Source of the DNA: Phallusia mammillata
Taxonomy: Eukaryota
NCBI GenBank assembly: GCA_965637545.1
Contig: OZ281498.1
Span: 13,578,001 to 13,642,000 of the forward strand
Length of the DNA: 64,000 nucleotides
Direction of reading: 5' to 3'
Below, piece after piece: positions 1 to 20,331 of the stretch (its first letter is position 1; each line of letters starts with the position of its first letter). Under the pieces are notes generated by a model that worked only from the letters and a program-made list of their open reading frames with translations, did no database searches and was not told the origin of the DNA. The translations under genes and the position numbers were made by a program.

Positions 1-307
1 GCTGTTAGGTTCAAAAATAAACTTATTTCGTGATGCAAATTATATCGAGAAAAATTCAATTCGATCATGTTAATACGCTCGGTAACCTGCAATTTCCTTC
101 CGCTTATCTTTCAACCGAAATAATCTTCAACTTATAACGGATAATCCGTTTTGATTACCAATATCCTCGACACTTTTTTCCGCTTTTACTCGTATATATA
201 CTGGGTCTGTCATGCAGTACTTCACTCACAACATTTGTTGTATCATCGATCGATTGTCTTCTGATTACTTTGCTTTGTATTTCGTTATACCAGCACCACT
301 GTGAAGA

Positions 308-3300
308 ATGGAATTCTCTACATGTGACAACCTTCAACAATGCGATGTTCCTTGCATTGAAAGTTTGTTTGCTAACGATCCCCAACTGCGAAGTTACGAA
401 AAGGATATTCGACTGAGGTTGGTACGACCTAAATAGTATTTGAATATATTGCTTTGTACCTATTTGAAAGGATATATCTGTATGAATAATGACGGTTTTA
501 TTTGGTCCACAAGGTAAATTAATAAGTGAGCTATTTGCGTCACCTATCGGTAAAAAGCAAATTCATGGCTTAGTTGAGTTGTGATATTAGCAGCCCCAAC
601 ATACATTAATAAATACGCTCGTTACAAACTGCTGTGTTTACTTGATATTGATGTCCAATTAAAGGTATGGTTTGTTCGAAAAAACTTTGATGGCAATTGA
701 ACGCGAGGAAGGGTTTGATCGATTCAGTCGCAGTTACGAAAATTACGGTGTTGTACTTACCCATGATGGAGGGGTGAAGTGCAGGGAATGGATTCCAAAT
801 GCACGGGCTGTCTACCTCAAGGGGGATTTTAGTGAGTTTTATGTACAGCTGGTTACTTTAGCTGAAACACAAACGTTGTAATTCACTCCATGATATATTC
901 AGGTAATTGGGAGAGAGTGAATTACAAAGAAGTTGGATACGGACAATGGGAGATTTACATTCCACCAAATCACGATGGAAGTTGTCCAATCCCACATCTT
1001 TCCGAGCTTAAAGTAATATTACTGCTGATAATCGTTTAATGGCATATGTTGTATTTTTGTACATTCGTTTCACTTTTAAAGTAGACCAAACACATAACAA
1101 ATATTTTGCATTTTTATTTACGTTTAGATTGAGATCGAAACAAGAGACAACCAAGTGTTGGAGAGAATTTCTCCTTGGGCAAATTACGTCACACAATGGG
1201 AATCTTCATTTAAGTGGCTTTTCTGGAATCCACAATCGAACGAGATTTGCAAACGAGTAAGTTAGATGGTTTCAAATAGTTTGGTTTGGTCCCAATTGAT
1301 ACACAACGATCATAACATTGTGATACGAAAATGATTTCGTTCGCAGTTTGTCGCAAATCGACTTCCCAAACCAGATCGTCTGCGTATCTATGAAGCTCAC
1401 ATCGGGATCAGCTCCGATCGATGTCAAGTTTCTTCTTTTCGCCATTTTACGTCTGAGGTTCTTCCACGAATCAGAGACTTAGGATACAACTGCGTCCTAT
1501 TGATGGCAATTATGGAACATCCTTGTTACTCAAGCGTTGGTTGCCAAGTTACCAATTTCTTTGCTCCATCCAGGTGATTATATCTTCCATTGCAATAAAC
1601 AAAAAAAGATAAACAACAAGTTATGGCCATTTTTTGTGTTTGCAGTCGGTACGGGACACCAGAAGACCTCAGAGAGTTGATCAGCGTTGCGCATGAAATG
1701 GGCATTTACGTCATGATGGACGTCATGCACAGTGAAGCATCGAGAAATTCTTCGGAAGGTTTAAACCGATTCGATGGCACCGATGATTGCTTCTTTCGAT
1801 CTGATAGGAGTGATTGTCATGCTCATGCAAATGATACAAGAAAGTTTGATTTTACAAAGTATATCTTGTTTTGTTTTCATGTTTGACCCTCAACAGAAAA
1901 CTAGCAACATTTTTTTAATTTTTAGATGGGAAGTGCTTCGGTTTCTTCTTTCCAATTTACGTCATTATGTGGACAACTTTGATTTCGATGGCTTTCGCTT
2001 TAGAGATGTGACGTCGATGATCTACCACGATCAAAGTTCGGGTTGGTATTAAAGCATCTGCCACATCAGAAACATATAATATAATTTATTTCTAACTTTT
2101 ATAGATCGTCGATATGCCTCCGGCTACAAACAATATTTCGGAATGCACATGGACATTGAGGCGATGGCTTATTTGATGCTTGCCAATAAGATGCTGCATC
2201 AGTTCTATCCACAAATCATCACAATAGCCGAGGTCAGTTAACTTCGTGAGGACCATACTTGAAGAATGCTGAAATAGAACAAATCAATTAATAACATTAT
2301 AATATCATACATAGGAACATTCTGAATATCCTGGTTTGACACATTTGGTGCGTGAGGGTGGTTTTGGTTTCGACTACAGACTATCAATGCACATTCCAAG
2401 CAAATGGATGCAGGTGATTCATGAATCAATGTTGGGCTGATATTTTGATTTGGCTTTGTGCGAAGTTTTTTGTTTGTGATTAGTTGCTAAACGAGCGTAG
2501 AGACGAAGATTGGAATATGAACGATATTTGTGAAATGTTTTTGGAATGTCGAAGAGGAGAAAAATACATCACTTTTTCGGAAAATTATGAGCAGGTAAGT
2601 TTTGTTATCTTTTATTTAATCGTGTTTGTATTTGACAAGCATTTTTTGTTGCAGAACACTGATGACCAGTGGACAATAGCAAGACAACTGATGGGTGACG
2701 AATGTATGTTGGATGGACAAGAAATGTCTCTGAAGTTGGATAGAGGAATAAGTCTTTATAAAATGGTCAGATTGTTCACCAGTGCTTTCAGTGGACAAGC
2801 TTTTCTAAACTTTATGGGTAAGAAGTCAAACAGTAAAAGTTTTGCATACGATGAAAATTTAATGCATTGATATTTTGCAAGCAGGTAATGAATTTGGTCA
2901 TCCTGATTGGGTGGAGTTTCCATCAGTGCAAAATTTTGACAACTATCATTTGGCCCGACGACAATTTCAGCTGGCCGACAACCCACAACTGAGATACAAA
3001 TTTCTCAATAACTTCGATATGGAAATGAATCGGTTGGAAGAACGGTTCGCGTGGCTCAACTCATCACCAGTATGTGTTTTACCGATAATGCTTTCCAAGA
3101 TCTTGGAAAAAACAGTTATTTGATGAAATAAAATAAAAACTGTCTCAAGAGGGAAACGACTTTAATCAGTGTAATATGTAGCGGATGAATTTAGCGTTTA
3201 GACAAACAAAATTATTACATGTGTTTTGATAACAAATATTTTTTCTTTTGTTTAAAGGCTTTTCTTACTCGCCAACATAATGATGACAAAGTAATCATCT

Positions 3301-4145
3301 TCGAACGTGCTGGTCTTCTTTTCATGTTCAACTTTCATCCAACAAGAAGCTATCCCGATTATCGAATCGGTGTGCGAACGCCAGGGAAGTAAGTAGAGTC
3401 CTAGAATGGTAGTGAAAATATAACTATTGTTGTTTGCATTTTTTAAAATTCATTAAAGGTACAACATCGTGCTGGACAGTGACGACAAAATGTTTGGAGG
3501 TCATGGAAGGAATCAAGCTTCAACTGATTTTTGTACCCAACAACAAGCTTGTGACAACATGAAATGCTCTCTGATGGTAAATTATAAGTTATATTATGAA
3601 TTAAATTAGAAAAGGCGTTATTTTATAAATTAGAAAGTGATTATTTGTTTAAACAACGCATTAATTGCATTTTGTTTTAGGTCTACTTGCCATCTCGATG
3701 TGTTGTCGTCATGGCAAACGAAACGATTTATTCCAAACAAAACTGGTTAAACGCCAACCGCGTTTATAACGAATATGGGAATTGTGGCGAGCGTGGTCGA
3801 AACTTTAATGATGCCAGACGTGGATCGGAATGGCATCGACACCGAAGTCACAGTCGAGGTCGTCAAGGTTTTCGACAAACTTCTCCTGGATTTGAAGCAC
3901 GTTTTAGTGGAATGTGTGTCACTGAACCGAGTTACCGAAGAGAAACAAGTCCTTATAAAGGCAGAAGTATCAACCGAAGTCAAAATCGTAGTGATTACCG
4001 TGATGGTCCGGATTACAACAGTCGTATGTATCGTGATGAAAATATGGGCAAGGAGATGAAAAGTGATTTTGGACGCAGCAGCCGAAGTCCTGTTCGAAGC
4101 AGATCTATTGGCTTTGAAAAATCAGTCAGCCCGACCCGGTATTAG
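308..4145 (+). CDS. GBE1: Glycogen branching enzyme (GH13_8, CBM48)-like protein, copy 1; 15 exons, 823 aa; active-site residues substituted; RS-rich C-terminal extension
   Basis: Exons 308-417, 665-831, 903-1012, 1128-1256, 1347-1573, 1646-1858, 1926-2041, 2105-2232, 2315-2413, 2484-2594, 2655-2817, 2885-3069, 3258-3388, 3459-3576, 3681-4145. All introns are GT-AG with consistent phases (2472 nt, no internal stop). GBE1 motifs are colinear: [128 protein letters not shown]. It is a divergent paralogue rather than a clear orthologue. Confidence 0.93.
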
Positions 4146-5200
4146 ATAATGTTGTTGTGAATTTATGTGGTTCGTTGTTTGTTAAATATGTTATGTGCCG
4201 AATGTATTTACATACAACATTTTTAGCTGTCATGTATTATTTTAGCAGGTGTTGTAAATATATTCCAATGTGAATAAAATATATGTATTTGAAACATACA
4301 TCGTGTGTGATAAGTAGCCAGAAACAGAACTTGCAAATTAGTTGTAATTGTAAACACCATGATATTTTAAAACGTAATCACGATTGTTAATAGTTTTGAA
4401 CATGGTATGTTCAAAAAATTGAGCAAATATGGTAAGCTTATAACGACCCGTGAACGCTCACTGGTTATAAGTCCGGAACGTCACAAGAGAGGGGATTGAA
4501 ACGCGCTTCCTAAAGACCTCCAACAAACTGTCCACGCAGAAATGTGTTTTGTAGATTTTGTTGAGTGAACACATCAATTGCGGTGGGAAAGGAGACGGTT
4601 TCTACGCAAAGGCATTGCGTTACTTATTCTGCTTTATATGAAGAAATACAACACAAATCTTACCAACTGTTGAGGTAACCGGAAAAAATAAACAACACGC
4701 AGTAATTACTGTCACACACCCCAACATTCAATGAAGTATAAGACCACAATGCGACGTCAAGCACAGTCCAGCTATTTTAGGCGACAGTTCTAGAGTAGAA
4801 TTAAGTCACGACAAACACATATTTGCAAATCGACTCATTAATAAAAAATACCTTTTACAGTTTACACGGTAAAAACACGACTTTCCAATACAACATCGTG
4901 CTGCACGAAAGTCAGTGACGAAAAAACTTATCCAAGTTGCGTTATCACACAAAACTGGCAGTTAGTTGTACGTCACACAACTCAATAGATTACAACACAA
5001 GTTGTTGTGAGAGAGAGCGAGAATCAATAGAATCAGCAATTACTGGCAAACAAAGTGTAACACATGGAAAACAGCAGTTTAATCATTATTATTTCAAACC
5101 TTATTTTTCGTGTTGGGAAAACTGGTGTTTGATGTGCAAACAAGATAAAATAACATTTTGCACATTTGGATTCTTCTCACCAAACAAATGTTTTAACACC

Positions 5201-5390
5201 GTCAAGTTGGCCGAGTGGTTAGCGCAACCGCTTAGTGATTACACGGTCAGTGGTTCTAATACTATCTCGGTCGCTTGTGTTTCCTTGAGCAAGAAACTTA
5301 TGCGGCATTGCTCCAAACCAGTGGTTCCCTATGGGTTGAACTAAATTGAAGTCACCAACGGCCAAAAACCGAAAAAATCAAATAAAAAAT
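5201..5390 (+). mobile_element. tRNA-derived SINE
   Basis: Pol III A box TGGCCGAGTGG (5208-5218) and degenerate B box GGTTCTAATAC (5252-5262). These are followed by tgtgtttccttgagcaagaaactta...cattgctcc, resembling the conserved central domain of CORE/V-type SINEs, and an A-rich tail. No complete cloverleaf or acceptor stem. Confidence 0.7.
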
Positions 5391-6409
5391 GATCAACGGA
5401 CAATAAAACAGGCAGCTCGACGGCGGACTCATTGTGAGCATAACGCATTCAGGCGTTGCCCGCCCACCGAGGATAAAAATGAAACAAAATGAAAAAATAA
5501 AAATGAAAAAAAAACGCTTTTGATTTGTTCGTTTTCTAATGAATATTTTGTCTTGATTACATGCGTTGTTGACAGAAGTACAAATACCTATTCTTATGTG
5601 ATCACTGAATTACTTGCTATTAAACAACCTGCGAATAAATGCCTTTGTAACGTATGCTACTAGATACAACCATTCGTCATTAAACCAATATAAAACCAAC
5701 AACATAAGGTCAAAATTTCGTCATACAAAAGGTGGATATACACCTACAACTCTTACGATGAAGTGCTTAATTTATATCATGTCAAAAAAGTTTTGCTAAA
5801 TGGCACTCAATGTAAACAATCCGTATTGTTGGATAAAGCAAAGTATTTTCGTTGTATGATTGTAGCAAATCTTGTCCAGTCTTGAATATAGTGCTAAGAA
5901 AGAAACTATATTAACTAAGTTACATATAAGTCAACATCTAGGACTCTAAAGCTGGATGAAACATGTTGTCCACATAGATTCTGGCAAATGAAAGTAAAAT
6001 AACTTGTATCTTTTCTATGATTACAACTGCAAAAGACCTGACCGCGTGCCGGCAGTCGACTGCTGATGTCCGATCCATGTACCCTTACAACAGTTGAGTC
6101 GCACTGCAATACACACTAAATATCAATTATATGCAAAGACAAGTGAAAATCTATAAAGTCTCACTTACATTGCAGTAACGACGCCATTCCGGTGTGTTTG
6201 TGTGATTTTTAAAACCCCACTCATCTTATTTTTGGTATTGTCATTCCCAAAATTTCTCCGATAAAACCTTTATTTTTCAGCCATTGAGAAGCTCTCATTT
6301 TACTCGACAATCGATTGAAAGAAATTGTAATTGTAATTCAGAAGCCAAGTCCTTCATTCATACAAAGTTTATTGCAAATTGAGAAATCGGGTTTTGTGAT
6401 CTGTTAAAA

Positions 6410-6646
6410 CAGTGGTCGGCAACCGCCGGTCCACGGCCCGGTACCGGTCCGCGAGGAGTTCGTTACCGGGCCGTATAACTTTTCCTGTGGAACGGTTTAA
6501 AAAACATTTTGCCCATGTATCCCGGGAATGATAAACTAATTTAGGTGTTTTTATTGCTAAATATTTGTAGTTTTTTGAAGACCGGTCCGCGATAAAATTT
6601 CACTTTCAAAAACGGTCCGCGGTGCAATAAAGGTTGCCGACCCCTG
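6410..6646. mobile_element. hAT (Charlie/Buster-type) MITE, family A copy 1
   Basis: TIRs cagtggtcggcaacc / ggttgccgacccctg; 8-bp TSD tgttaaaa / cgttaaaa (7 of 8 match); internal ccggtccgcg repeats. Confidence 0.88.
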
Positions 6647-7377
6647 CGTTAAAACATAAGCAAGACAAAACATTCACAAAAATAATGAACAATATTCTAC
6701 TTTAATGGTGCTTGTTAAGTGTTAGAAACTGATTGAAAAAACAGTGAGATGATTCCATTCGGGTAAAAGATGAAATTATGTCTCGGTTTGAAGCAATTAC
6801 GTTAGTTAGATTATCTGATATCAAATTGGGGTCATTTGGTATTTCGCGATTAAGCCTAAGTATATTGCTCATTACAATACATTACATTCTAACCATAACG
6901 ATCAACACACTTTGGCGAGCAATAAAAGTATTATAACAATCAAATCAAATAATCTCGTTATCCCTTTTGCATAGGAAAAAATATTCAAAATTGTTCGACT
7001 TAACGATCAACCAAAAATAAATTATTATTTAAGAAAGGAAAACACATCTCCCAATATTTAATTTTAAGCTTAATTTTTTTAACATTGAAACTTTGTAAAT
7101 GAATCGCACAAAGCCAAATCAATATATCAGCCTATCATGTTAATACGCTCGGTAACCTGCAATTTCCTTCCGCTTATCTTTCAACCGAAATAATCTTATA
7201 CTTATAACGGATAATCCGTTTTGATTACCAATATCCTCGACACTTTTTTCCGCTTTTACTCGTATATATACTGGGTCTGTCATGCAGTACTTCACTCACA
7301 ACATTTGTTGTATCATCGATCGATTGTCTTCTGATTACTTTGCTTTGTATTTCGTTATACCAGCACTACTGTGAAGA

Positions 7378-10300
7378 ATGGATTTCTCTACATGTGACAA
7401 CCTTCAACAATGCGATGTTCCTTGCATTGAAAGTTTGTTTGCTAACGATCCCCAACTGCGAAGTTACGAAAAGGATATTCGACTTAGGTTGGTACGGCCT
7501 AAATGGTATTTGAATATATTGCTTTGTACCTATTTGAAAGGATATTTCTGTATAAATAATGACGGTTTTATTTGGTCCACAAGGAAAATTAATAAGTGAG
7601 CTATTTGCGTCACCTATCGGTAAAAAGCAAATTCATGGCTGAGTTGAGTTGTGATATTAGCAGCTCCAACATACATTAATAAATACACTCGTTACAAACT
7701 GTGTTTACTTGATATTGATGTCCAATTAATTAAAGGTATGGTTTGTTCGAAAAAACTTTGATGGCAATTGAACGCGAGGAAGGGTTTGATCGATTCAGTC
7801 GCAGTTACGAAAATTACGGTGTTGTACTTACCCATGATGGAGGAGTGAAGTGCAGGGAATGGATTCCAAATGCACGGACTGTCTACCTCAAGGGGGATTT
7901 TAGTGAGTTTTATGTACAGCTTGTTAGTACAGCTGAAACACAAACGTTGTAATTCACTCAATGATATATTCAGGCAATTGGGAGAGAGTGAATTACAAAG
8001 AAGTTGGATACGGACAATGGGAGATTTACATTCCACCAAATCACGATGGAAGTTGTCCAATCCCACATCTTTCCGAGCTTAAAGTAATATTACTGCTGAT
8101 AATCGTTTAATGACATATGTTGTATTATTGTACAATCGTTTCACTTTTAAAGTGTACCAAACATATAACAAGTATTTGCAAAGATATTTATTTTTATTTA
8201 GATTGAGATCGAGACAAGAGACAACCAAGTGTTGGAGAGAATTTCTCCTTGGGCAAATTACGTCACACAATGGGAATCGTCATTTAAGTGGCTTTTCTGG
8301 AATCCAAAATCGAACGAGATTTCCAAACGAGTAAGTTAGATGGTTTCAAATAGTTTGGTTTGGACCCAATTGCTATACAACGATCATAACATTATAATAG
8401 GAAAATGATTTCTTTCGCAGTTTGTCGCAAATCGACTTCCCAAACCAGATCGTCTGCGTATTTATGAAGCTCACATCGGGATCAGCTCCGATCGATGTCA
8501 GGTTTCTTCTTTTCGCCATTTTACGTCTGAGGTTCTTCCACGAATCAGAGGCTTAGGATACAACTGTGTCCTATTGATGGCAATTATGGAACATCCTTGT
8601 TACTCAAGCGTTGATTGCCAAGTTACCAATTTCTTTGCTCCATCCAGGTGATTATATCTTCCCTTGCAATAAACAAAAAAGAGACAAAGATCAAGTTATG
8701 GCCATTTTTTGTGTTTGCAGTCGGTACGGGACACCAGAAGACCTCAGAGAGTTGATCAGCGTTGCGCATGAAATGGGCATTTACGTCATGATGGACGTCA
8801 TGCACAGTGAAGCATCGAGAAATTCTTCGGAAGGTTTAAACCGATTCGATGGCACCGATGATTGCTTCTTTCGATCTGATAGACGTGATCGTCATGCAAC
8901 TGATACAAGAAAGTTTGATTTTACAAAGTATATCTTGTTTTGTTTTCATGTTTGACTCCTAACTGAAAATTAGCAACATTTTTTAAATTTTTAGATGGGA
9001 AGTGCTTCGGTTTCTTCTTTCCAATTTACGTCATTATGTGGACAACTTTGATTTCGATGGTTTTCGCTTTAGAGATGTGACGTCGATGATCTACCACGAT
9101 CAAAGTTCGGGTTGGTATTAAAGCAATCTGCCACATTAGAAACTTATATAATTTATTCCTAACTTTATAGATCGTCGATATGCCTCCGACTACCAACAAT
9201 ATTTCGGAATGCACATGGACATTGAAGCGATAGCTTATTTGATGCTTGCCAATAAGATGCTGCATCAGTTCTATCCACAAATCATCACAATAGCCGAGGT
9301 CAGTTAACAACAATTATTTATAAAACTCGTAAGGACCATACTTGAAGAATGTTGAAATAAAACAAATCAATTAATAACATTATAATATCATACATAGGAA
9401 CATTCTGAATATCCTGGTTTGACACATTTGGTGCGTGAGGGTGGTTTTGGTTTCGACTACAGACTATCAATGCACATTCCAAGCAAATGGATGCAGGTGA
9501 TTCATGAATCGATGTTAGGCCGATATATTGATTTGGCTTTGTGTGAAGTTTATTGTTTGTGATTAGTTGCTAAACGAGCGTAGAGATGAAGATTGGAATA
9601 TGAACGATATTTGTGAAATGTTTTTGGAATGTCGAAGAGGAGAAAAATACATCACCTTTCCGGAAAATTATGAGCAGGTAAGTTTTGTTATCTTTTATTT
9701 AATCGTGTTTGTATTTAACAAGCATTTTTTGTTGTAGAACACTGATGACCAGTGGACGATAGCAAGACAACTGATGGGTGACGAATGTATGTTGGATGGA
9801 CAAGAAATGTCTCTGAAGTTGGATAGAGGAATAAGTCTTTATAAAATGATCAGATTGTTTACCAGTGCTTTCAGTGGACAAGCTTTTCTAAACTTTATGG
9901 GTAAGAAGTCAAACAGTAAAGTTTTGCATATGGTAAAAATTTAATACATTGATATTTTGCAAGCAGGTAATGAATTTGGTCAACCTGATTGGGTGGAGTT
10001 TCCATCAGTGCAAAACTTTGACAACTATCATTTGGCCAGACGACAATTTCAGCTGGCCGACAACCCACAACTGAGATACAAATTTCTCAATAACTTCGAT
10101 ATGGAAATGAATCGGTTGGAAGAACGGTTCGCGTGGCTCAACTCATCACCAGTACGTGTTTTACCGACAATGCTTTCCAAGATCTTAAAAAAACAGTTAT
10201 TTGATGAAATGAAATAAAAACTGTCACAGAAGGGAAACGACTTTAATCAGTGTAATATGTAGCGAGGATGGATTTAGAGTTTAGACAAACAAAATTATTA

Positions 10301-11281
10301 CATGTGTTTTGATAACAAATATTTTTTCTTTTGTTTCAAGGCTTTTCTTACTCGCCAACATAATGATGACAAAGTAATCATCTTCGAACGTGCTGGTCTT
10401 CTTTTCATGTTCAACTTTCATCCAACAAGAAGCTATCCCGACTATCGAATCGGTGTGCGAACGCCAGGGAAGTAAGTAGAGTCCTAGAATGGTAGTGAAA
10501 ATATAACTATTGTTGTTTACATTTTTCAAAATTCATTAAAGGTACAACATCGTGCTGGACAGTGACGACAAAATGTTTGGAGGTCATGGAAGGAATCAAG
10601 CTTCAACTGATTTTTATACCCAACAACAAGCTTGTGACAACATGAAATGTTCTCTGATGGTAAGAGTTTCAGTATGGAAGGTTTTCTTTATTTTTTAGCG
10701 GCATAAGTTCAAATTATTTATAAATTATATCATAAATTAAATTAGAAAAGGCATTATTTTATGAATTAAAAAGGGATTAAGTTTTCAAACAACGCATTAA
10801 TTGCATTTTGTTTTAGGTCTACTTACCATCACGAAGTGTTGTCGTCATGGCAAACGAAACGATTTATTCCAAACAAAACTGGATAAACGCCAACCGCGTT
10901 TATAACGAGTATGGGAATTGTGGCGAGCGTGGTCGAAACTTTAATGATGCCAGACGTGGATCGGAATGGCATCGACACCGAAGTCACAGTCGAGGTCGTC
11001 AAGGTTTTCGACAAACTTCTCCTGGATTTGAAACACGTTTTAGTGGAATGTGTGTCACTGAACCGAGTTACCAAAGAGAAACAAGTCCTTATAAAGGCAG
11101 AAGTTTCAATCGAAGTCAAAATCGTATTGATTACCGTGATGGTCCGGATTACAACAGTCGTATGTATCGTGGTGAAAATATGGGCAAGGAGATGAAAAGT
11201 GATTTTGGACGCAGCAGCCGAAGTCCTGTTCGAAGCAGATCTATTGGCTTTAAAAAATCACATAGCCCGACCCGATATTAG
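7378..11281 (+). CDS. GBE1: Glycogen branching enzyme-like protein, copy 2; same 15-exon structure, about 821 aa
   Basis: Exon-by-exon match to copy 1 at an offset of about 7070 nt. ATG at 7378 (MDFSTCDN), stop TAG at 11279-11281. All splice sites are retained. The only coding indel seen is an in-frame 6-nt deletion in exon 6 ([11 protein letters not shown] vs [13 protein letters not shown]). Same RFRDVT and ENYEQ substitutions as copy 1. Confidence 0.92.
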
Positions 11282-13040
11282 ATGTTGTATTGTTGTAATA
11301 ATTGTTGTCTGTTGTTGCTTGTTTGATGTTATTTGTGTTGGTATGTTTAAGTAAAGTATCATTTCCTTGCAAACAATGTATTCCTATTGTCTTTGAAATT
11401 TATTTCTAATGTAAACAAACATATGTGTTTGGTGGTTGTAACAGTAATGTCGAATGTAAATACAAAAATTGAACTAAATCTCTAGTGTACTTATTTGCTC
11501 TGAAAAGAAAAGTATAGGTGTGTGTTCTTATCTTTCACACTCTTTGGGCATGGTGAAGACCTGCAGTCATGAGTAGTTATACAGTTATAACCTTTGATAA
11601 AAGGTATAAAGCATTACAACCCAAAATCGAAGCCTCGTCTAACCGTCACTACCACAACACGGGACTACCACGACAAACAATTTGGTGATTTACCAATGTT
11701 ATTAATTCGTTTGCTACATGTCCAAACAATTACACGTATGGTTGGTTCAACGTTAAATTAAAGTTTTTATTTGCATATTGCAACGGAAAGCTGGAGTCAA
11801 TTGCTAGGATCCAACATGCAAAAAAGGACAAAAAGGATCATGCAGGAATTCACGCCTTGTCAGTGGCGGTATTAAAAATCGTCTCTGCGCTGAGCAGTTT
11901 GATTTGTGAAAACAGAGTAAATACAACTATGAGGTTTTGTCCTGAGCAGTCATCTGAAACTCGAGTTAATTAGTAACAAGCCAGTTCTTAACACTAGAAA
12001 GTGGGGTTCGACTTCGTCAAGACTTTTTTGCAAGGGTCAACGCAGTTTAACCAAAACAAACAATCAGGAATTCAGACAAAAGGAAATATTCTATACTCGT
12101 TTGTTGAAAAAAATAATCTTTTTCGTTACTTTGAATTCTCATGCTCGCGATGTGAGAAAACCCAAATATTACCAAAACAATAACAATACGCCGGACCAAA
12201 TAGAGGCGTCATATCGAATTAAGCTAAACACACTGAATGTGAGAAAACGCAAACACTACCAAGGTTTAATTGAAATAAAACGTAATAGTCACACTGCCAC
12301 AGCATTTGGAACAGGATATAGGGACACGGCAAATTTTGTTAATCGTCCAACGTAAGCAATTGGGTAACATTTTTTGTACATTGATAATAAAATCCGAAGT
12401 TTGCAACCGGATTAGTCTCTGAGCCTGAAACTTAATCGATTTTTTCTGATAAGGGAGGTTGAAATCAACAAGTTGCTCAGGAGACGGGACAAAAAAAGTT
12501 TGAAAAACACTAATGTAGAAGTGTTATCAACTATACGTCACTTCACTTTGTGCTTAATGACATAAATTTCAGGGTGATTATTAAAGTGTTCCTTGCTGAT
12601 GGAATGTCATTTGCGTCACTGATTTGTATCTGCAAATCTTTATCAAATAACTTTTAGTTACAACGCCCACATCCTGAGGCAAATCGAACTTTGTACTGTG
12701 AATCGATGAATGAATTGAGTGACTGTGTATCCAGGAATATTTCGGAAATGGAGGTGACGAACCAACAAGAAAACGTGACCAGAAGAAGTTGAACAGGAAC
12801 AAAGTTTCTATTTTCACTACAGGCATTGAACGGCGCGTGTCGGGAAAGAGGCGTTGACTATTTGACAATAAGGTTACTGCAAACACACCTGCACTCATAT
12901 ATTAATGAAAAAGATTGAAAATCAGTATCGCACTTTATTAACGTGATTGACGCATGAACACGTTTGCTATTAAGGACATCAACACAAGGTTGCACATTTG
13001 CAGTTGTATCACAGACGACTTAGGAAAGGGATTTGCGAAT

Positions 13041-19008: not shown

Positions 19009-19243
19009 CCGTTGTCGGCAACCGCCGGTCCGCGGCCCGGTACCGGTCCGCGAGGAGTTCGTTACCGGGCCGTATACTTTTTCATGTTAAATGCTATAAA
19101 ACTTTTTGCCCATGTATCCCAGGCATAATAAACTAATTTAAGCGTTTTTATAGCTATATATTTGTAGTTTTTTGAAGACCGGTCCGCGATGAAATTTTAG
19201 TTTCAAAACCGGTCCGCAGTGCAAAAAAGGTTGCCGACCCCTG
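19009..19243. mobile_element. hAT MITE, family A copy 2
   Basis: Colinear and highly similar to 6410-6646 over its whole length. Right TIR ggttgccgacccctg is intact, left TIR is slightly decayed, and no TSD is recognisable. Confidence 0.85.
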
Positions 19244-20331
19244 GTTTAACAGACGTGACTGGTGTCTAGTAGGGAAAATGATACATGGCATTTAGTTGGT
19301 CGGTTGTTATTCTTAATCAAGTAAGTTAATTGACCATGTACAATTAAAACGTTCAATTTCAAATCGAATCGGAAAAGTTCAGGCCAAAACCAAAACTATT
19401 TATTTGGCTAAAATGTTTCGGCCAAACGAAACTTCGGTGCATTACTAGACTCAAAATATTTACTTTACAGCAAGCACACTACGAATAGTAGTACAGAGAA
19501 ACCAATTTTCCAGTTCCAATATTTTGTAGTGGATTTGGGGTTATTTAATTGGTGCAACGGGAAAAACGATTTGCAGCAGATCAATTCCGAAAACAATGTT
19601 ATTTCCAATAAAGCACAAGTGGATATAATACTTATGAGTTCTATATATGCGGTATTGCGGTACATGTTGATAAAGTTCAACAGATAATAACTAATTACAT
19701 TAATTTATGGGGTGATCTGATGTTTGTTATCTCAGCAGCAGCACTAAAATATGGCAAAAATGCATTTACGATATACACACAACATTTATCTGTTTCATAA
19801 TGTTATACACATACAAAAATTGACATGTCACAACATTGCGCAAACATTTATCGACACTTGCCAATTGTTATTCAAAATAATAATGATAACAATTCTTATG
19901 CATACAGACCTGAGAAACCACTTTTTAATTTAGCTTATAATTGAACATTATTGATTTCGTACAAGCATGACGACACAGCTTCATAAAAGTAAATACAAAA
20001 TTGCCACATTGCGTGATAGAAGTAAGATTAGTTCGTTCCAAACAAATATATATTGCGTACACTGTACATGTATTACCCGCTTTCTATTTGAACGGCCTAA
20101 TTCAATAAGTTTGATTCACATCTTGTTTGCTATTTGTTATCCGTAATATGAGTGGATTAGTAATATCCACCTTATCTACGACTCACAACGTAAGCGGACT
20201 TAATAAATTTGTTGTTTACCATCAGAATTTTAGCACTGTATATATATATGCTTAAACATTTAGTTCTTTCAAACGATATTTTCTAGCATAAAAAGGGTTT
20301 CATTGTTCGATACTGCGTAATAACCTTAAAA

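What the first reader, a model, noticed from the sequence alone, without database searches (positions are those of the whole stretch)
3714..4145. A ~140-aa Arg/Ser/Gly/Tyr-rich low-complexity tail fused to the GBE-like domain
Seen: canonical GBE1 ends a few residues after VYIPSR, but here the last exon continues with [52 protein letters not shown] and [19 protein letters not shown]. It is retained in copy 2 (10847-11281). Knowledge: RS/RG/SP-rich disordered regions are SRPK/CLK/CDK substrates and drive RNA binding and condensate formation. Inference: a dead glycogen-binding enzyme joined to such a tail could couple glycogen particles to RNP granules or nuclear speckles, for example in germ cells. 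I know of no described GBE with this architecture.
Basis: partly seen in the sequence, partly recalled or inferred. Interest (0 to 1): 0.7.

Follow-up and report, generated by a model that had tools for sequence, protein, structure and literature searches.

The report
Disordered Arg/Ser-rich tail on dead branching enzyme
A family of catalytically dead glycogen-branching-enzyme genes in a sea squirt really does encode, and transcribe, an extra ~140-residue basic, disordered Arg/Ser-rich tail found nowhere else, but its function is unknown and it is not a classical splicing-factor RS domain.

Summary
RNA-derived contigs from three studies splice 3576|3681 and run unspliced through the tail past the stop at 4143-4145. 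The RNA-supported 15-exon model is an intact 823-aa ORF. The canonical branching enzyme of the same genome stops 11 residues after VYLPSR; this family continues about 137 residues further.

The tail is basic (net +14), R 17.5%, S 14.6%, poorly hydrophobic and predicted disordered. It has four S/T-P sites, more than shuffles give (p=0.008).

Seven gene copies carry it; five are intact. Against an old copy, introns and 3'UTR have diverged about 0.45-0.55 per site while the tail differs by 0.05-0.06. Conservation stops at the stop codon. Among the young copies, however, amino-acid constraint is weak (omega 0.66, not separable from 1; body 0.17).

No relative of the tail was found in Pfam, PDB, 1.84 billion representative proteins, or elsewhere in the genome. 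It fails the SR-protein definition.

Most likely it is a real, lineage-specific, phospho-regulatable interaction region on a glycogen-binding pseudoenzyme. The RNP or speckle link is untested, and orthologue tails could not be examined here. The scan had already noted the dead enzyme family on this window (s1-366355), not the tail.

The parts
308..3576 (+). Exons 1-14 of copy 1 (GBE-like body, aa 1-669). Exons: 308-417, 665-831, 903-1012, 1128-1256, 1347-1573, 1646-1858, 1926-2041, 2105-2232, 2315-2413, 2484-2594, 2655-2817, 2885-3069, 3258-3388, 3459-3576.
   Evidence: Thirteen GT..AG joints appear in RNA-like contigs of three studies and none in the DNA run. The exon 1/2 joint is inferred from the sequence and contig overhang. 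The joined frame is open. Matches to GBE structures in PDB.
3577..3680 (+). Last intron (104 nt, GT..AG).
   Evidence: The joint 3576|3681 is seen in X1, X2 and X10 and is absent from DNA run X8.
3681..3731 (+). Start of the last exon: the end of the GBE C-terminal domain ([17 protein letters not shown]). The canonical enzyme stops about here.
3732..4142 (+). Tail proper, aa 687-823: basic, R/S/G/N/Y-rich, predicted disordered.
   Evidence: Exon-like GC of 45% against 25.5% in the 3'UTR. Conservation like the other exons.
3816..3875 (+). SEG low-complexity patch 1 (aa 715-734, the His/Arg/Ser-rich [20 protein letters not shown] stretch).
4074..4106 (+). SEG low-complexity patch 2 (aa 801-811, [11 protein letters not shown]), the only RS-repeat-like stretch. 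It is followed by RSIGF, which fits the RVxF pattern.
3882..3887 (+). S/T-P site 1 (RQTSP, aa 737-738).
   Evidence: kept in all 7 copies.
3948..3956 (+). S/T-P site 2 (RETSP-Y, aa 759-761). It also fits R-x(2-5)-P-Y.
4086..4091 (+). S/T-P site 3 (SRSPV).
4128..4133 (+). S/T-P site 4 (SVSPTRY, the C-terminus).
4143..4145 (+). Stop codon TAG. Conservation between copies ends here.
4146..4300 (+). 3'UTR with the only AATAAA, at 4273-4278. RNA depth falls to zero beyond 4400.
7378..11281 (+). Copy 2 of the gene (15 exons, intact 821-aa ORF).
10817..11281 (+). Last exon of copy 2 with its tail (L005).

Best explanation
The tail is a genuine protein-coding C-terminal extension of about 137 residues on a tandemly amplified family of catalytically dead glycogen-branching-enzyme paralogues. 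Shown: it is spliced onto the GBE-like body, it is transcribed through its stop codon, and the frame is kept open. It has been conserved over a period in which introns and 3'UTR diverged almost to saturation. It has no detectable relative elsewhere. Inferred: it is an intrinsically disordered, strongly basic region whose length, charge and short motifs matter more than its exact sequence. Those motifs include four conserved Ser/Thr-Pro sites, two of them in R-x-T-S-P, and one RS-like patch. It most likely acts as a phosphorylation-controlled, multivalent interaction or tethering arm. Such an arm would bring the glycogen-binding pseudoenzyme to a partner: a polyanion such as RNA, or a protein. 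The partner is unknown.
For: Transcription and splicing: one 531-nt contig joins 3459-3575 to 3680-4064. Others cover 3680-4007 and 3978-4225. A 2179-nt contig carries the joints from 831 to 3680 and runs on to 3896. These joints occur in three studies and are absent from the DNA run. Variants in those contigs match paralogue-specific bases, so several copies are expressed. Coding: the RNA-supported model is an intact 823-aa ORF. Five of seven copies are intact over 821-823 aa and all seven tails are open. Conservation: mean pairwise difference is 0.035 in the tail, 0.006-0.050 in the other full exons, 0.05-0.175 in introns and 0.233 in the 3'UTR. In 843 flanking non-coding columns there are 39 gap runs. 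In the tail the codon alignment shows a single 9-nt in-frame gap. Against the old copy L007, introns differ by about 0.45, the 3'UTR by about 0.55 and the tail by 0.05-0.06. Similarity stops at the TAG in L005 and L007. Disorder: hydrophobic residues are 17.5% against 37% in the body and net charge is +14. The charge-hydropathy value is 0.319 against a boundary of 0.45. AlphaFold2 mean pLDDT is 39.9. Motifs: four of six prolines follow S/T (shuffle p=0.008) and there are two RxxSP (p=0.008). All are kept in the 7 copies.
Against: Among the copies, the codon model gives omega 0.66 for the tail. That is not significantly below 1 (p=0.088) and is significantly higher than the body's 0.17 (p=5e-7). 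Low synonymous divergence against L007 (dS about 0.1 with intron d about 0.45) leaves room for exon-limited gene conversion instead of selection. The break at the stop codon in L005 may be a recombination boundary, because its introns are only about 7% diverged. There is no protein-level evidence. No orthologue from another species was examined. The single-sequence AlphaFold result is weak evidence for disorder. The runs are labelled RNA only by guess; their cDNA nature rests on the spliced joints.
Confidence: 0.55

Rival explanations
1. A translated but essentially neutral appendage. The stop codon was lost in an ancestor of this family, the frame ran into former 3' sequence, and the extension persists because a disordered tail on a pseudoenzyme does little harm.
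For: Omega of 0.66 is not separable from 1 among the copies. No relative of the tail was found anywhere. The second dead paralogue on C4 has a different, shorter extension of 32 aa after MAN, so C-terminal ends appear labile in dead copies. Two tail-bearing copies are already broken upstream.
Against: The tail stays 94-95% identical to L007 while introns and 3'UTR are near saturation. The only indel is in frame, against many in the flanks. GC is exon-like, 45% against 25.5% in the 3'UTR. S/T-P sites are enriched and all are kept. No similarity to the DNA downstream of the canonical or C4 paralogue stop codons supports a read-through origin.
Confidence: 0.27
2. One reading: an RS/RG-type domain, phosphorylated by SRPK/CLK, that takes the glycogen-binding protein to RNP granules or nuclear speckles.
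For: R+S is 32% overall and reaches 40% in one 50-aa stretch, and there is an [11 protein letters not shown] patch. The nearest language-model cluster is an SRSF10-like one, but at 0.79 it is below the level that shuffled proteins often reach. R-x(2-5)-P-Y (RRETSPY) in a basic disordered context resembles a PY-type import signal and is kept in 7 copies, but shuffles give it 20% of the time. There are 16 aromatic and 24 Arg residues in 137, a sticker-rich make-up (own knowledge of the Tyr/Arg grammar of FUS-family proteins).
Against: No RRM or other RNA-binding domain. RS/SR-dipeptide residues reach at most 34% in 50 aa, there are no long consecutive repeats and no RGG. This fails the Manley-Krainer criteria as quoted in PMC9456285. 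No classical NLS pattern. There are no localisation or tissue data.
Confidence: 0.08
3. A docking tail for a glycogen-metabolism enzyme. For example, a PP1-binding RVxF motif (RSIGF) could make the dead enzyme an analogue of the PPP1R3 glycogen-targeting subunits.
For: RSIGF fits [RK]-x(0,1)-[VI]-{P}-[FW] and is kept in all seven copies. It is flanked by phosphorylatable serines.
Against: The pattern occurs in 12% of shuffles of the tail. The seven copies are close kin, so retention says little. No PP1 partner was tested.
Confidence: 0.05
4. The open frame past the canonical end is not translated: a chance ORF in the 3'UTR, or a mis-assembled exon.
For: No proteomic evidence. The run type is a guess.
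Against: There is no stop between the GBE domain and 4143 in the RNA-supported frame. The chance of an open frame is about 5e-4. The frame is open in seven copies. Composition and conservation are exon-like and change sharply at the stop codon. The only AATAAA lies 128 nt after the stop.
Confidence: 0.04

Closest known systems
Canonical glycogen branching enzyme GBE1 (GH13; human structures 4BZY/5CLT; canonical paralogue of this genome at C4:27665732-27676450)
   Same: Same fold and domain order through to the VY[IL]PSR strand of the C-terminal domain. Exon translations match PDB GBE chains at 1e-13 to 1e-21.
   Different: The canonical enzyme stops 11 residues after VYLPSR, whereas this family goes on for about 137 more. 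The catalytic positions are replaced: GFRFRD for GYRFDG, and SENYEQ for AESHDQ.
RS domains of SR and SR-related proteins
   Same: Arg/Ser-rich, basic, disordered, with Ser-Pro and RS dipeptides. The nearest language-model cluster is SRSF10-like, a weak lead only.
   Different: No RRM. RS-dipeptide density is below the 40% criterion and there are almost no consecutive RS repeats (PMC9456285). No sequence homology.
Glycogen or starch adaptors built from a glucan-binding module plus a disordered arm with short motifs: PPP1R3 subunits (CBM21 + RVxF), STBD1 (CBM20 + Atg8-interacting motif), algal SAGA1/2 (CBM20 + Rubisco-binding motifs). Named from own knowledge.
   Same: The same logic may apply: a glucan-binding body with a flexible motif-bearing arm that recruits a partner or tethers the granule to another compartment.
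   Different: Here the body is a whole dead GH13 enzyme, not a small CBM. None of the defining motifs is shown to work. RSIGF is a chance-level match, and I saw no [WFY]-x-x-[LIV] motif on reading the tail.
Other GH13-derived pseudoenzymes: heavy chains of amino-acid transporters SLC3A2/4F2hc and SLC3A1/rBAT (own knowledge)
   Same: A GH13 fold retained as a non-catalytic scaffold.
   Different: Those are membrane-anchored ectodomains without a basic disordered tail and are not of the GBE subfamily.
Second dead GBE paralogue of this genome (C4:27654680-27662755, minus strand)
   Same: Also has replaced catalytic positions and also runs past the canonical end after ...VMAN.
   Different: Its extension is only 32 aa, is T/Y/N-rich, and is unrelated in sequence to this tail.

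Membership tests
Canonical GBE1 C-terminus | The protein ends about 11-15 residues after the VY[IL]PSR strand. | tested here: not met
   The canonical paralogue ends VYLPSRCALLMALDEE-stop. Human chain 4bzy_A is 702 aa with exon 13 at 602-644. Here 148 residues follow VYLPSR.
Active GH13 branching enzyme | Catalytic nucleophile Asp in GxRxDG, and His-Asp in ESHDQ. | tested here: not met
Copy 1 has GFRFRD and SENYEQ where the canonical paralogue has GYRFDG and AESHDQ.
SR protein (Manley and Krainer criteria as quoted in PMC9456285) | One or two N-terminal RRMs (PF00076). | tested here: not met
   The tail exon and five body ORFs scanned exon by exon gave no RRM. Every exon of the 823-aa model has a counterpart in the canonical GBE genes.
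SR protein (Manley and Krainer criteria as quoted in PMC9456285) | An RS domain of at least 50 aa with more than 40% RS content. | tested here: not met
   R+S peaks at exactly 40% in one 50-aa stretch and is 32% overall. Residues in RS/SR dipeptides reach at most 34%.
SR protein (Manley and Krainer criteria as quoted in PMC9456285) | Consecutive RS or SR repeats. | tested here: not met
   Only RSRS and RSSRS.
Intrinsically disordered region | Low mean hydropathy with high net charge, and no confident fold. | tested here: met
   H 0.319 against a boundary of 0.45, while the body is on the folded side. pLDDT 39.9 with a single sequence, which is weak evidence. No Pfam or PDB match.
RGG/RG box | Clustered RGG or RG repeats. 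| tested here: not met
   No RGG. Seven scattered RG/GR dipeptides.
PY-type nuclear import signal | R/K/H-x(2-5)-P-Y in a basic, disordered stretch. | tested here: inconclusive
   RRETSPY is present in all 7 copies, but the pattern appears in 20% of shuffles.
PP1 regulatory subunit | An RVxF docking motif that binds the PP1 catalytic subunit. | tested here: inconclusive
   RSIGF fits the pattern, but so do 12% of shuffles. Binding is not testable here.
   The word search only sees proteins of 85-270 aa for this query. The joined model could not be sent to the searches. The exhaustive search with the tail gave no hit, not even to this species.

The most novel reading that the evidence does not exclude
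The tail converts a glycogen-binding pseudoenzyme into a new kind of chordate glycogen adaptor: a phosphorylation-switched, Arg/Tyr-rich arm that tethers glycogen particles to an RNA-protein condensate, or carries the protein into the nucleus. The gene would have been amplified to five or more active copies because dosage matters in a particular tissue or stage.
Probability: 0.1. Interest if true: 0.75.

Novelty: new variant of a known kind. Interest (0 to 1): 0.4.

Why it matters
Pseudoenzymes usually gain new roles through what they bind and what is attached to them. Here a complete but dead branching enzyme has acquired a long basic, phosphorylatable, disordered arm. It has no relatives, and the gene has been amplified and is transcribed. 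If the arm has a partner, this would be a new way of wiring glycogen particles to other cell machinery in a chordate. It would also be a clean case of a coding extension arising without any detectable donor sequence. If the arm is neutral, it shows how readily C-termini drift once catalysis is lost.

Tried and rejected
- Pfam on the tail exon: no family at E<=1.
- Word search with the tail (candidates 85-270 aa only): 18 candidates, none significant.
- Exhaustive HMMER search of 1.84 billion representatives with the tail: zero hits. The tailed protein of this species is evidently not a representative there, so this says little about close relatives.
- JGI metagenome contigs: 198 pattern matches, none confirmed.
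- PDB by sequence with the tail at E<=10: nothing. Exon 14 alone was too short to hit.
- ESM Atlas: best cluster SRSF10-like at 0.79, treated as compositional and not as kinship.
- Own-genome search: only the seven family copies, so the tail was not borrowed from another gene.
- Origin by read-through: no similarity of the tail, as DNA or protein, to the 1.5 kb downstream of the canonical or C4 paralogue last exons. The C4 extension aligns only over VYLPSR..MAN.
- Tandem repeats inside the tail: none.
- The bacterial promoter/terminator scan is irrelevant to a eukaryote and was ignored.
- Literature: no paper with 'glycogen branching enzyme' plus 'ascidian'. Nothing relevant for branching enzyme plus pseudoenzyme, or plus C-terminal extension and disordered.
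- Pseudogene or UTR reading: rejected.

Full report
**What is there.**
- The window lies at C5:13578001-13642000 of a 240-Mb genome.
TAG is at 4143-4145.

**Transcription and gene model.**
- I laid contigs of four public runs on 1-6000. Three runs from three studies (X1, X2, X10) carry thirteen GT..AG joints, including 3576|3681.
- The DNA run X8 carries none of these joints. The genome holds no intronless copy. So those three runs are cDNA-derived even though their label is a guess.
- One contig joins 3459-3575 directly to 3680-4064. Others cover 3680-4007 and 3978-4225, which is past the stop.
- No joint or indel was listed inside the tail. Nine further joints were not shown, and contigs drop rare isoforms.
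- Depth vanishes beyond 4400. The only AATAAA lies at 4273.
- With these junctions the 15 exons give an intact 823-aa ORF from ATG 308.
- I built that joined model only inside scripts, for frame and composition checks. The joined-model searches are therefore left out of this work.

**Where the normal protein ends.**
- Exon 13 aligns to residues 602-644 of the 702-residue human GBE1 chain.
- The genome has a canonical GBE on C4 with the catalytic motifs intact. It ends 11 residues after VYLPSR.
- A second dead paralogue lies head to head with it. That one runs on for 32 unrelated T/Y/N-rich residues.
- So about 137 residues here are extra.

**Nature of the tail.**
- Composition: R 17.5%, S 14.6%, G 9.5%, N 8.0%, Y 5.8%. 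Net charge is +14.
- Hydrophobic residues make up 17.5% against 37% in the body.
- It falls on the disordered side of the charge-hydropathy plot, while the body is on the folded side. AlphaFold2 gives pLDDT 39.9.
- SEG masks only 31 residues, and there are no tandem repeats.
- Four of the six prolines follow Ser or Thr, and two sit in R-x-T-S-P. Each of these features has shuffle p=0.008.
- An RVxF-like RSIGF and an R-x(2-5)-P-Y are present in all copies. They are expected by chance in 12% and 20% of shuffles, so they are leads only.
- The tail fails the SR-protein definition on all three criteria (definition in PMC9456285).

**Copies and selection.**
- Seven genes carry the tail: six in a tandem array with a period of 7.1-7.7 kb, and one 0.5 Mb away on the other strand.
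- All seven have 15 exons, and five are intact at 821-823 aa. One has a 5-nt deletion in exon 14, and the distant copy has W319-stop.
- Every tail frame is open. The only indel in the codon alignment is 9 nt, in frame.
- Mean pairwise difference is 0.035 in the tail, like the other exons. It is 0.05-0.175 in introns and 0.233 in the 3'UTR, with many indels there.
- Against the distant copy, introns differ by about 0.45, the 3'UTR by about 0.55 and the tail by only 0.05-0.06.
- In two lineages similarity ends right at the TAG.
- At the amino-acid level the constraint is weak. The codon model gives omega 0.66 for the tail (p=0.088 against 1). It gives 0.17 for the body (p=2e-14), and the two differ at p=5e-7.
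- This pattern is usual for disordered regions, where frame, length and composition are kept but sequence is free.
- Exon-limited gene conversion cannot be excluded. For copy 2 the break at the stop codon may be a recombination boundary.

**Relatives.** None was found for the tail in any of these searches:
- Pfam
- PDB
- the word search
- 1.84 billion representative proteins
- metagenome contigs
- the rest of this genome

Whether orthologues in other ascidians have a tail could not be tested with these tools.

**Reading.**
- The tail is real and coding.
- It is most likely a lineage-specific disordered arm whose charge and phospho-sites are what matter. That would make the dead enzyme an adaptor whose partner is unknown.
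- A neutral appendage is the main rival.
- The RNP or speckle idea remains possible but has no direct support.

Noticed in passing
L004 = G000:C5:13557291-13560752; gene at C5:13555416-13559254: This array copy has a 5-nt deletion (GGACA) in exon 14, which shifts the frame and gives a stop at about aa 634. Its tail ORF is still open. It is either a young pseudogene or an assembly error.
   Followed up: partly
L007, L025 = G000:C5:13068752-13072836 (minus strand): A seventh tail-bearing copy lies 0.5 Mb from the array. It has old introns (d about 0.45), a W319-stop at the first codon of exon 7, and a 9-nt in-frame deletion in the tail.
   Followed up: partly
L017-L020 = G000:C4:27645001-27685000: The canonical GBE (+ strand, 27665732-27676450) and a second dead paralogue (- strand, 27654680-27662755) sit head to head about 3 kb apart. 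The dead one has its own unrelated 32-aa T/Y/N-rich extension.
   Followed up: partly
window 1817-1822: A 6-nt (His-Ala) indel in exon 6 distinguishes copies. All RNA contigs laid here lack the 6 nt, so the most abundant transcripts come from copies other than copy 1 in that exon.
   Followed up: partly
window 4800-5600: The intergenic stretch between the two copies has very high summed depth in the DNA run (up to about 30,000 against about 500) and many loose ends. This indicates a high-copy repeat or mobile element, and it is also present in the RNA-like runs.
   Followed up: no
window 11282-11470 versus 4146-4330: The 3'UTR of copy 2 is unrelated to that of copy 1 (d about 0.57) although their introns differ by only about 7%. 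So the array copies are mosaics, with a recombination or conversion boundary close to the stop codon.
   Followed up: partly
window 6498-6652 and 19095-19249: A 155-nt direct repeat at 89% identity links the GBE-like array spacer to the neighbouring cysteine-rich peptide gene cluster. It is probably a dispersed repeat.
   Followed up: no
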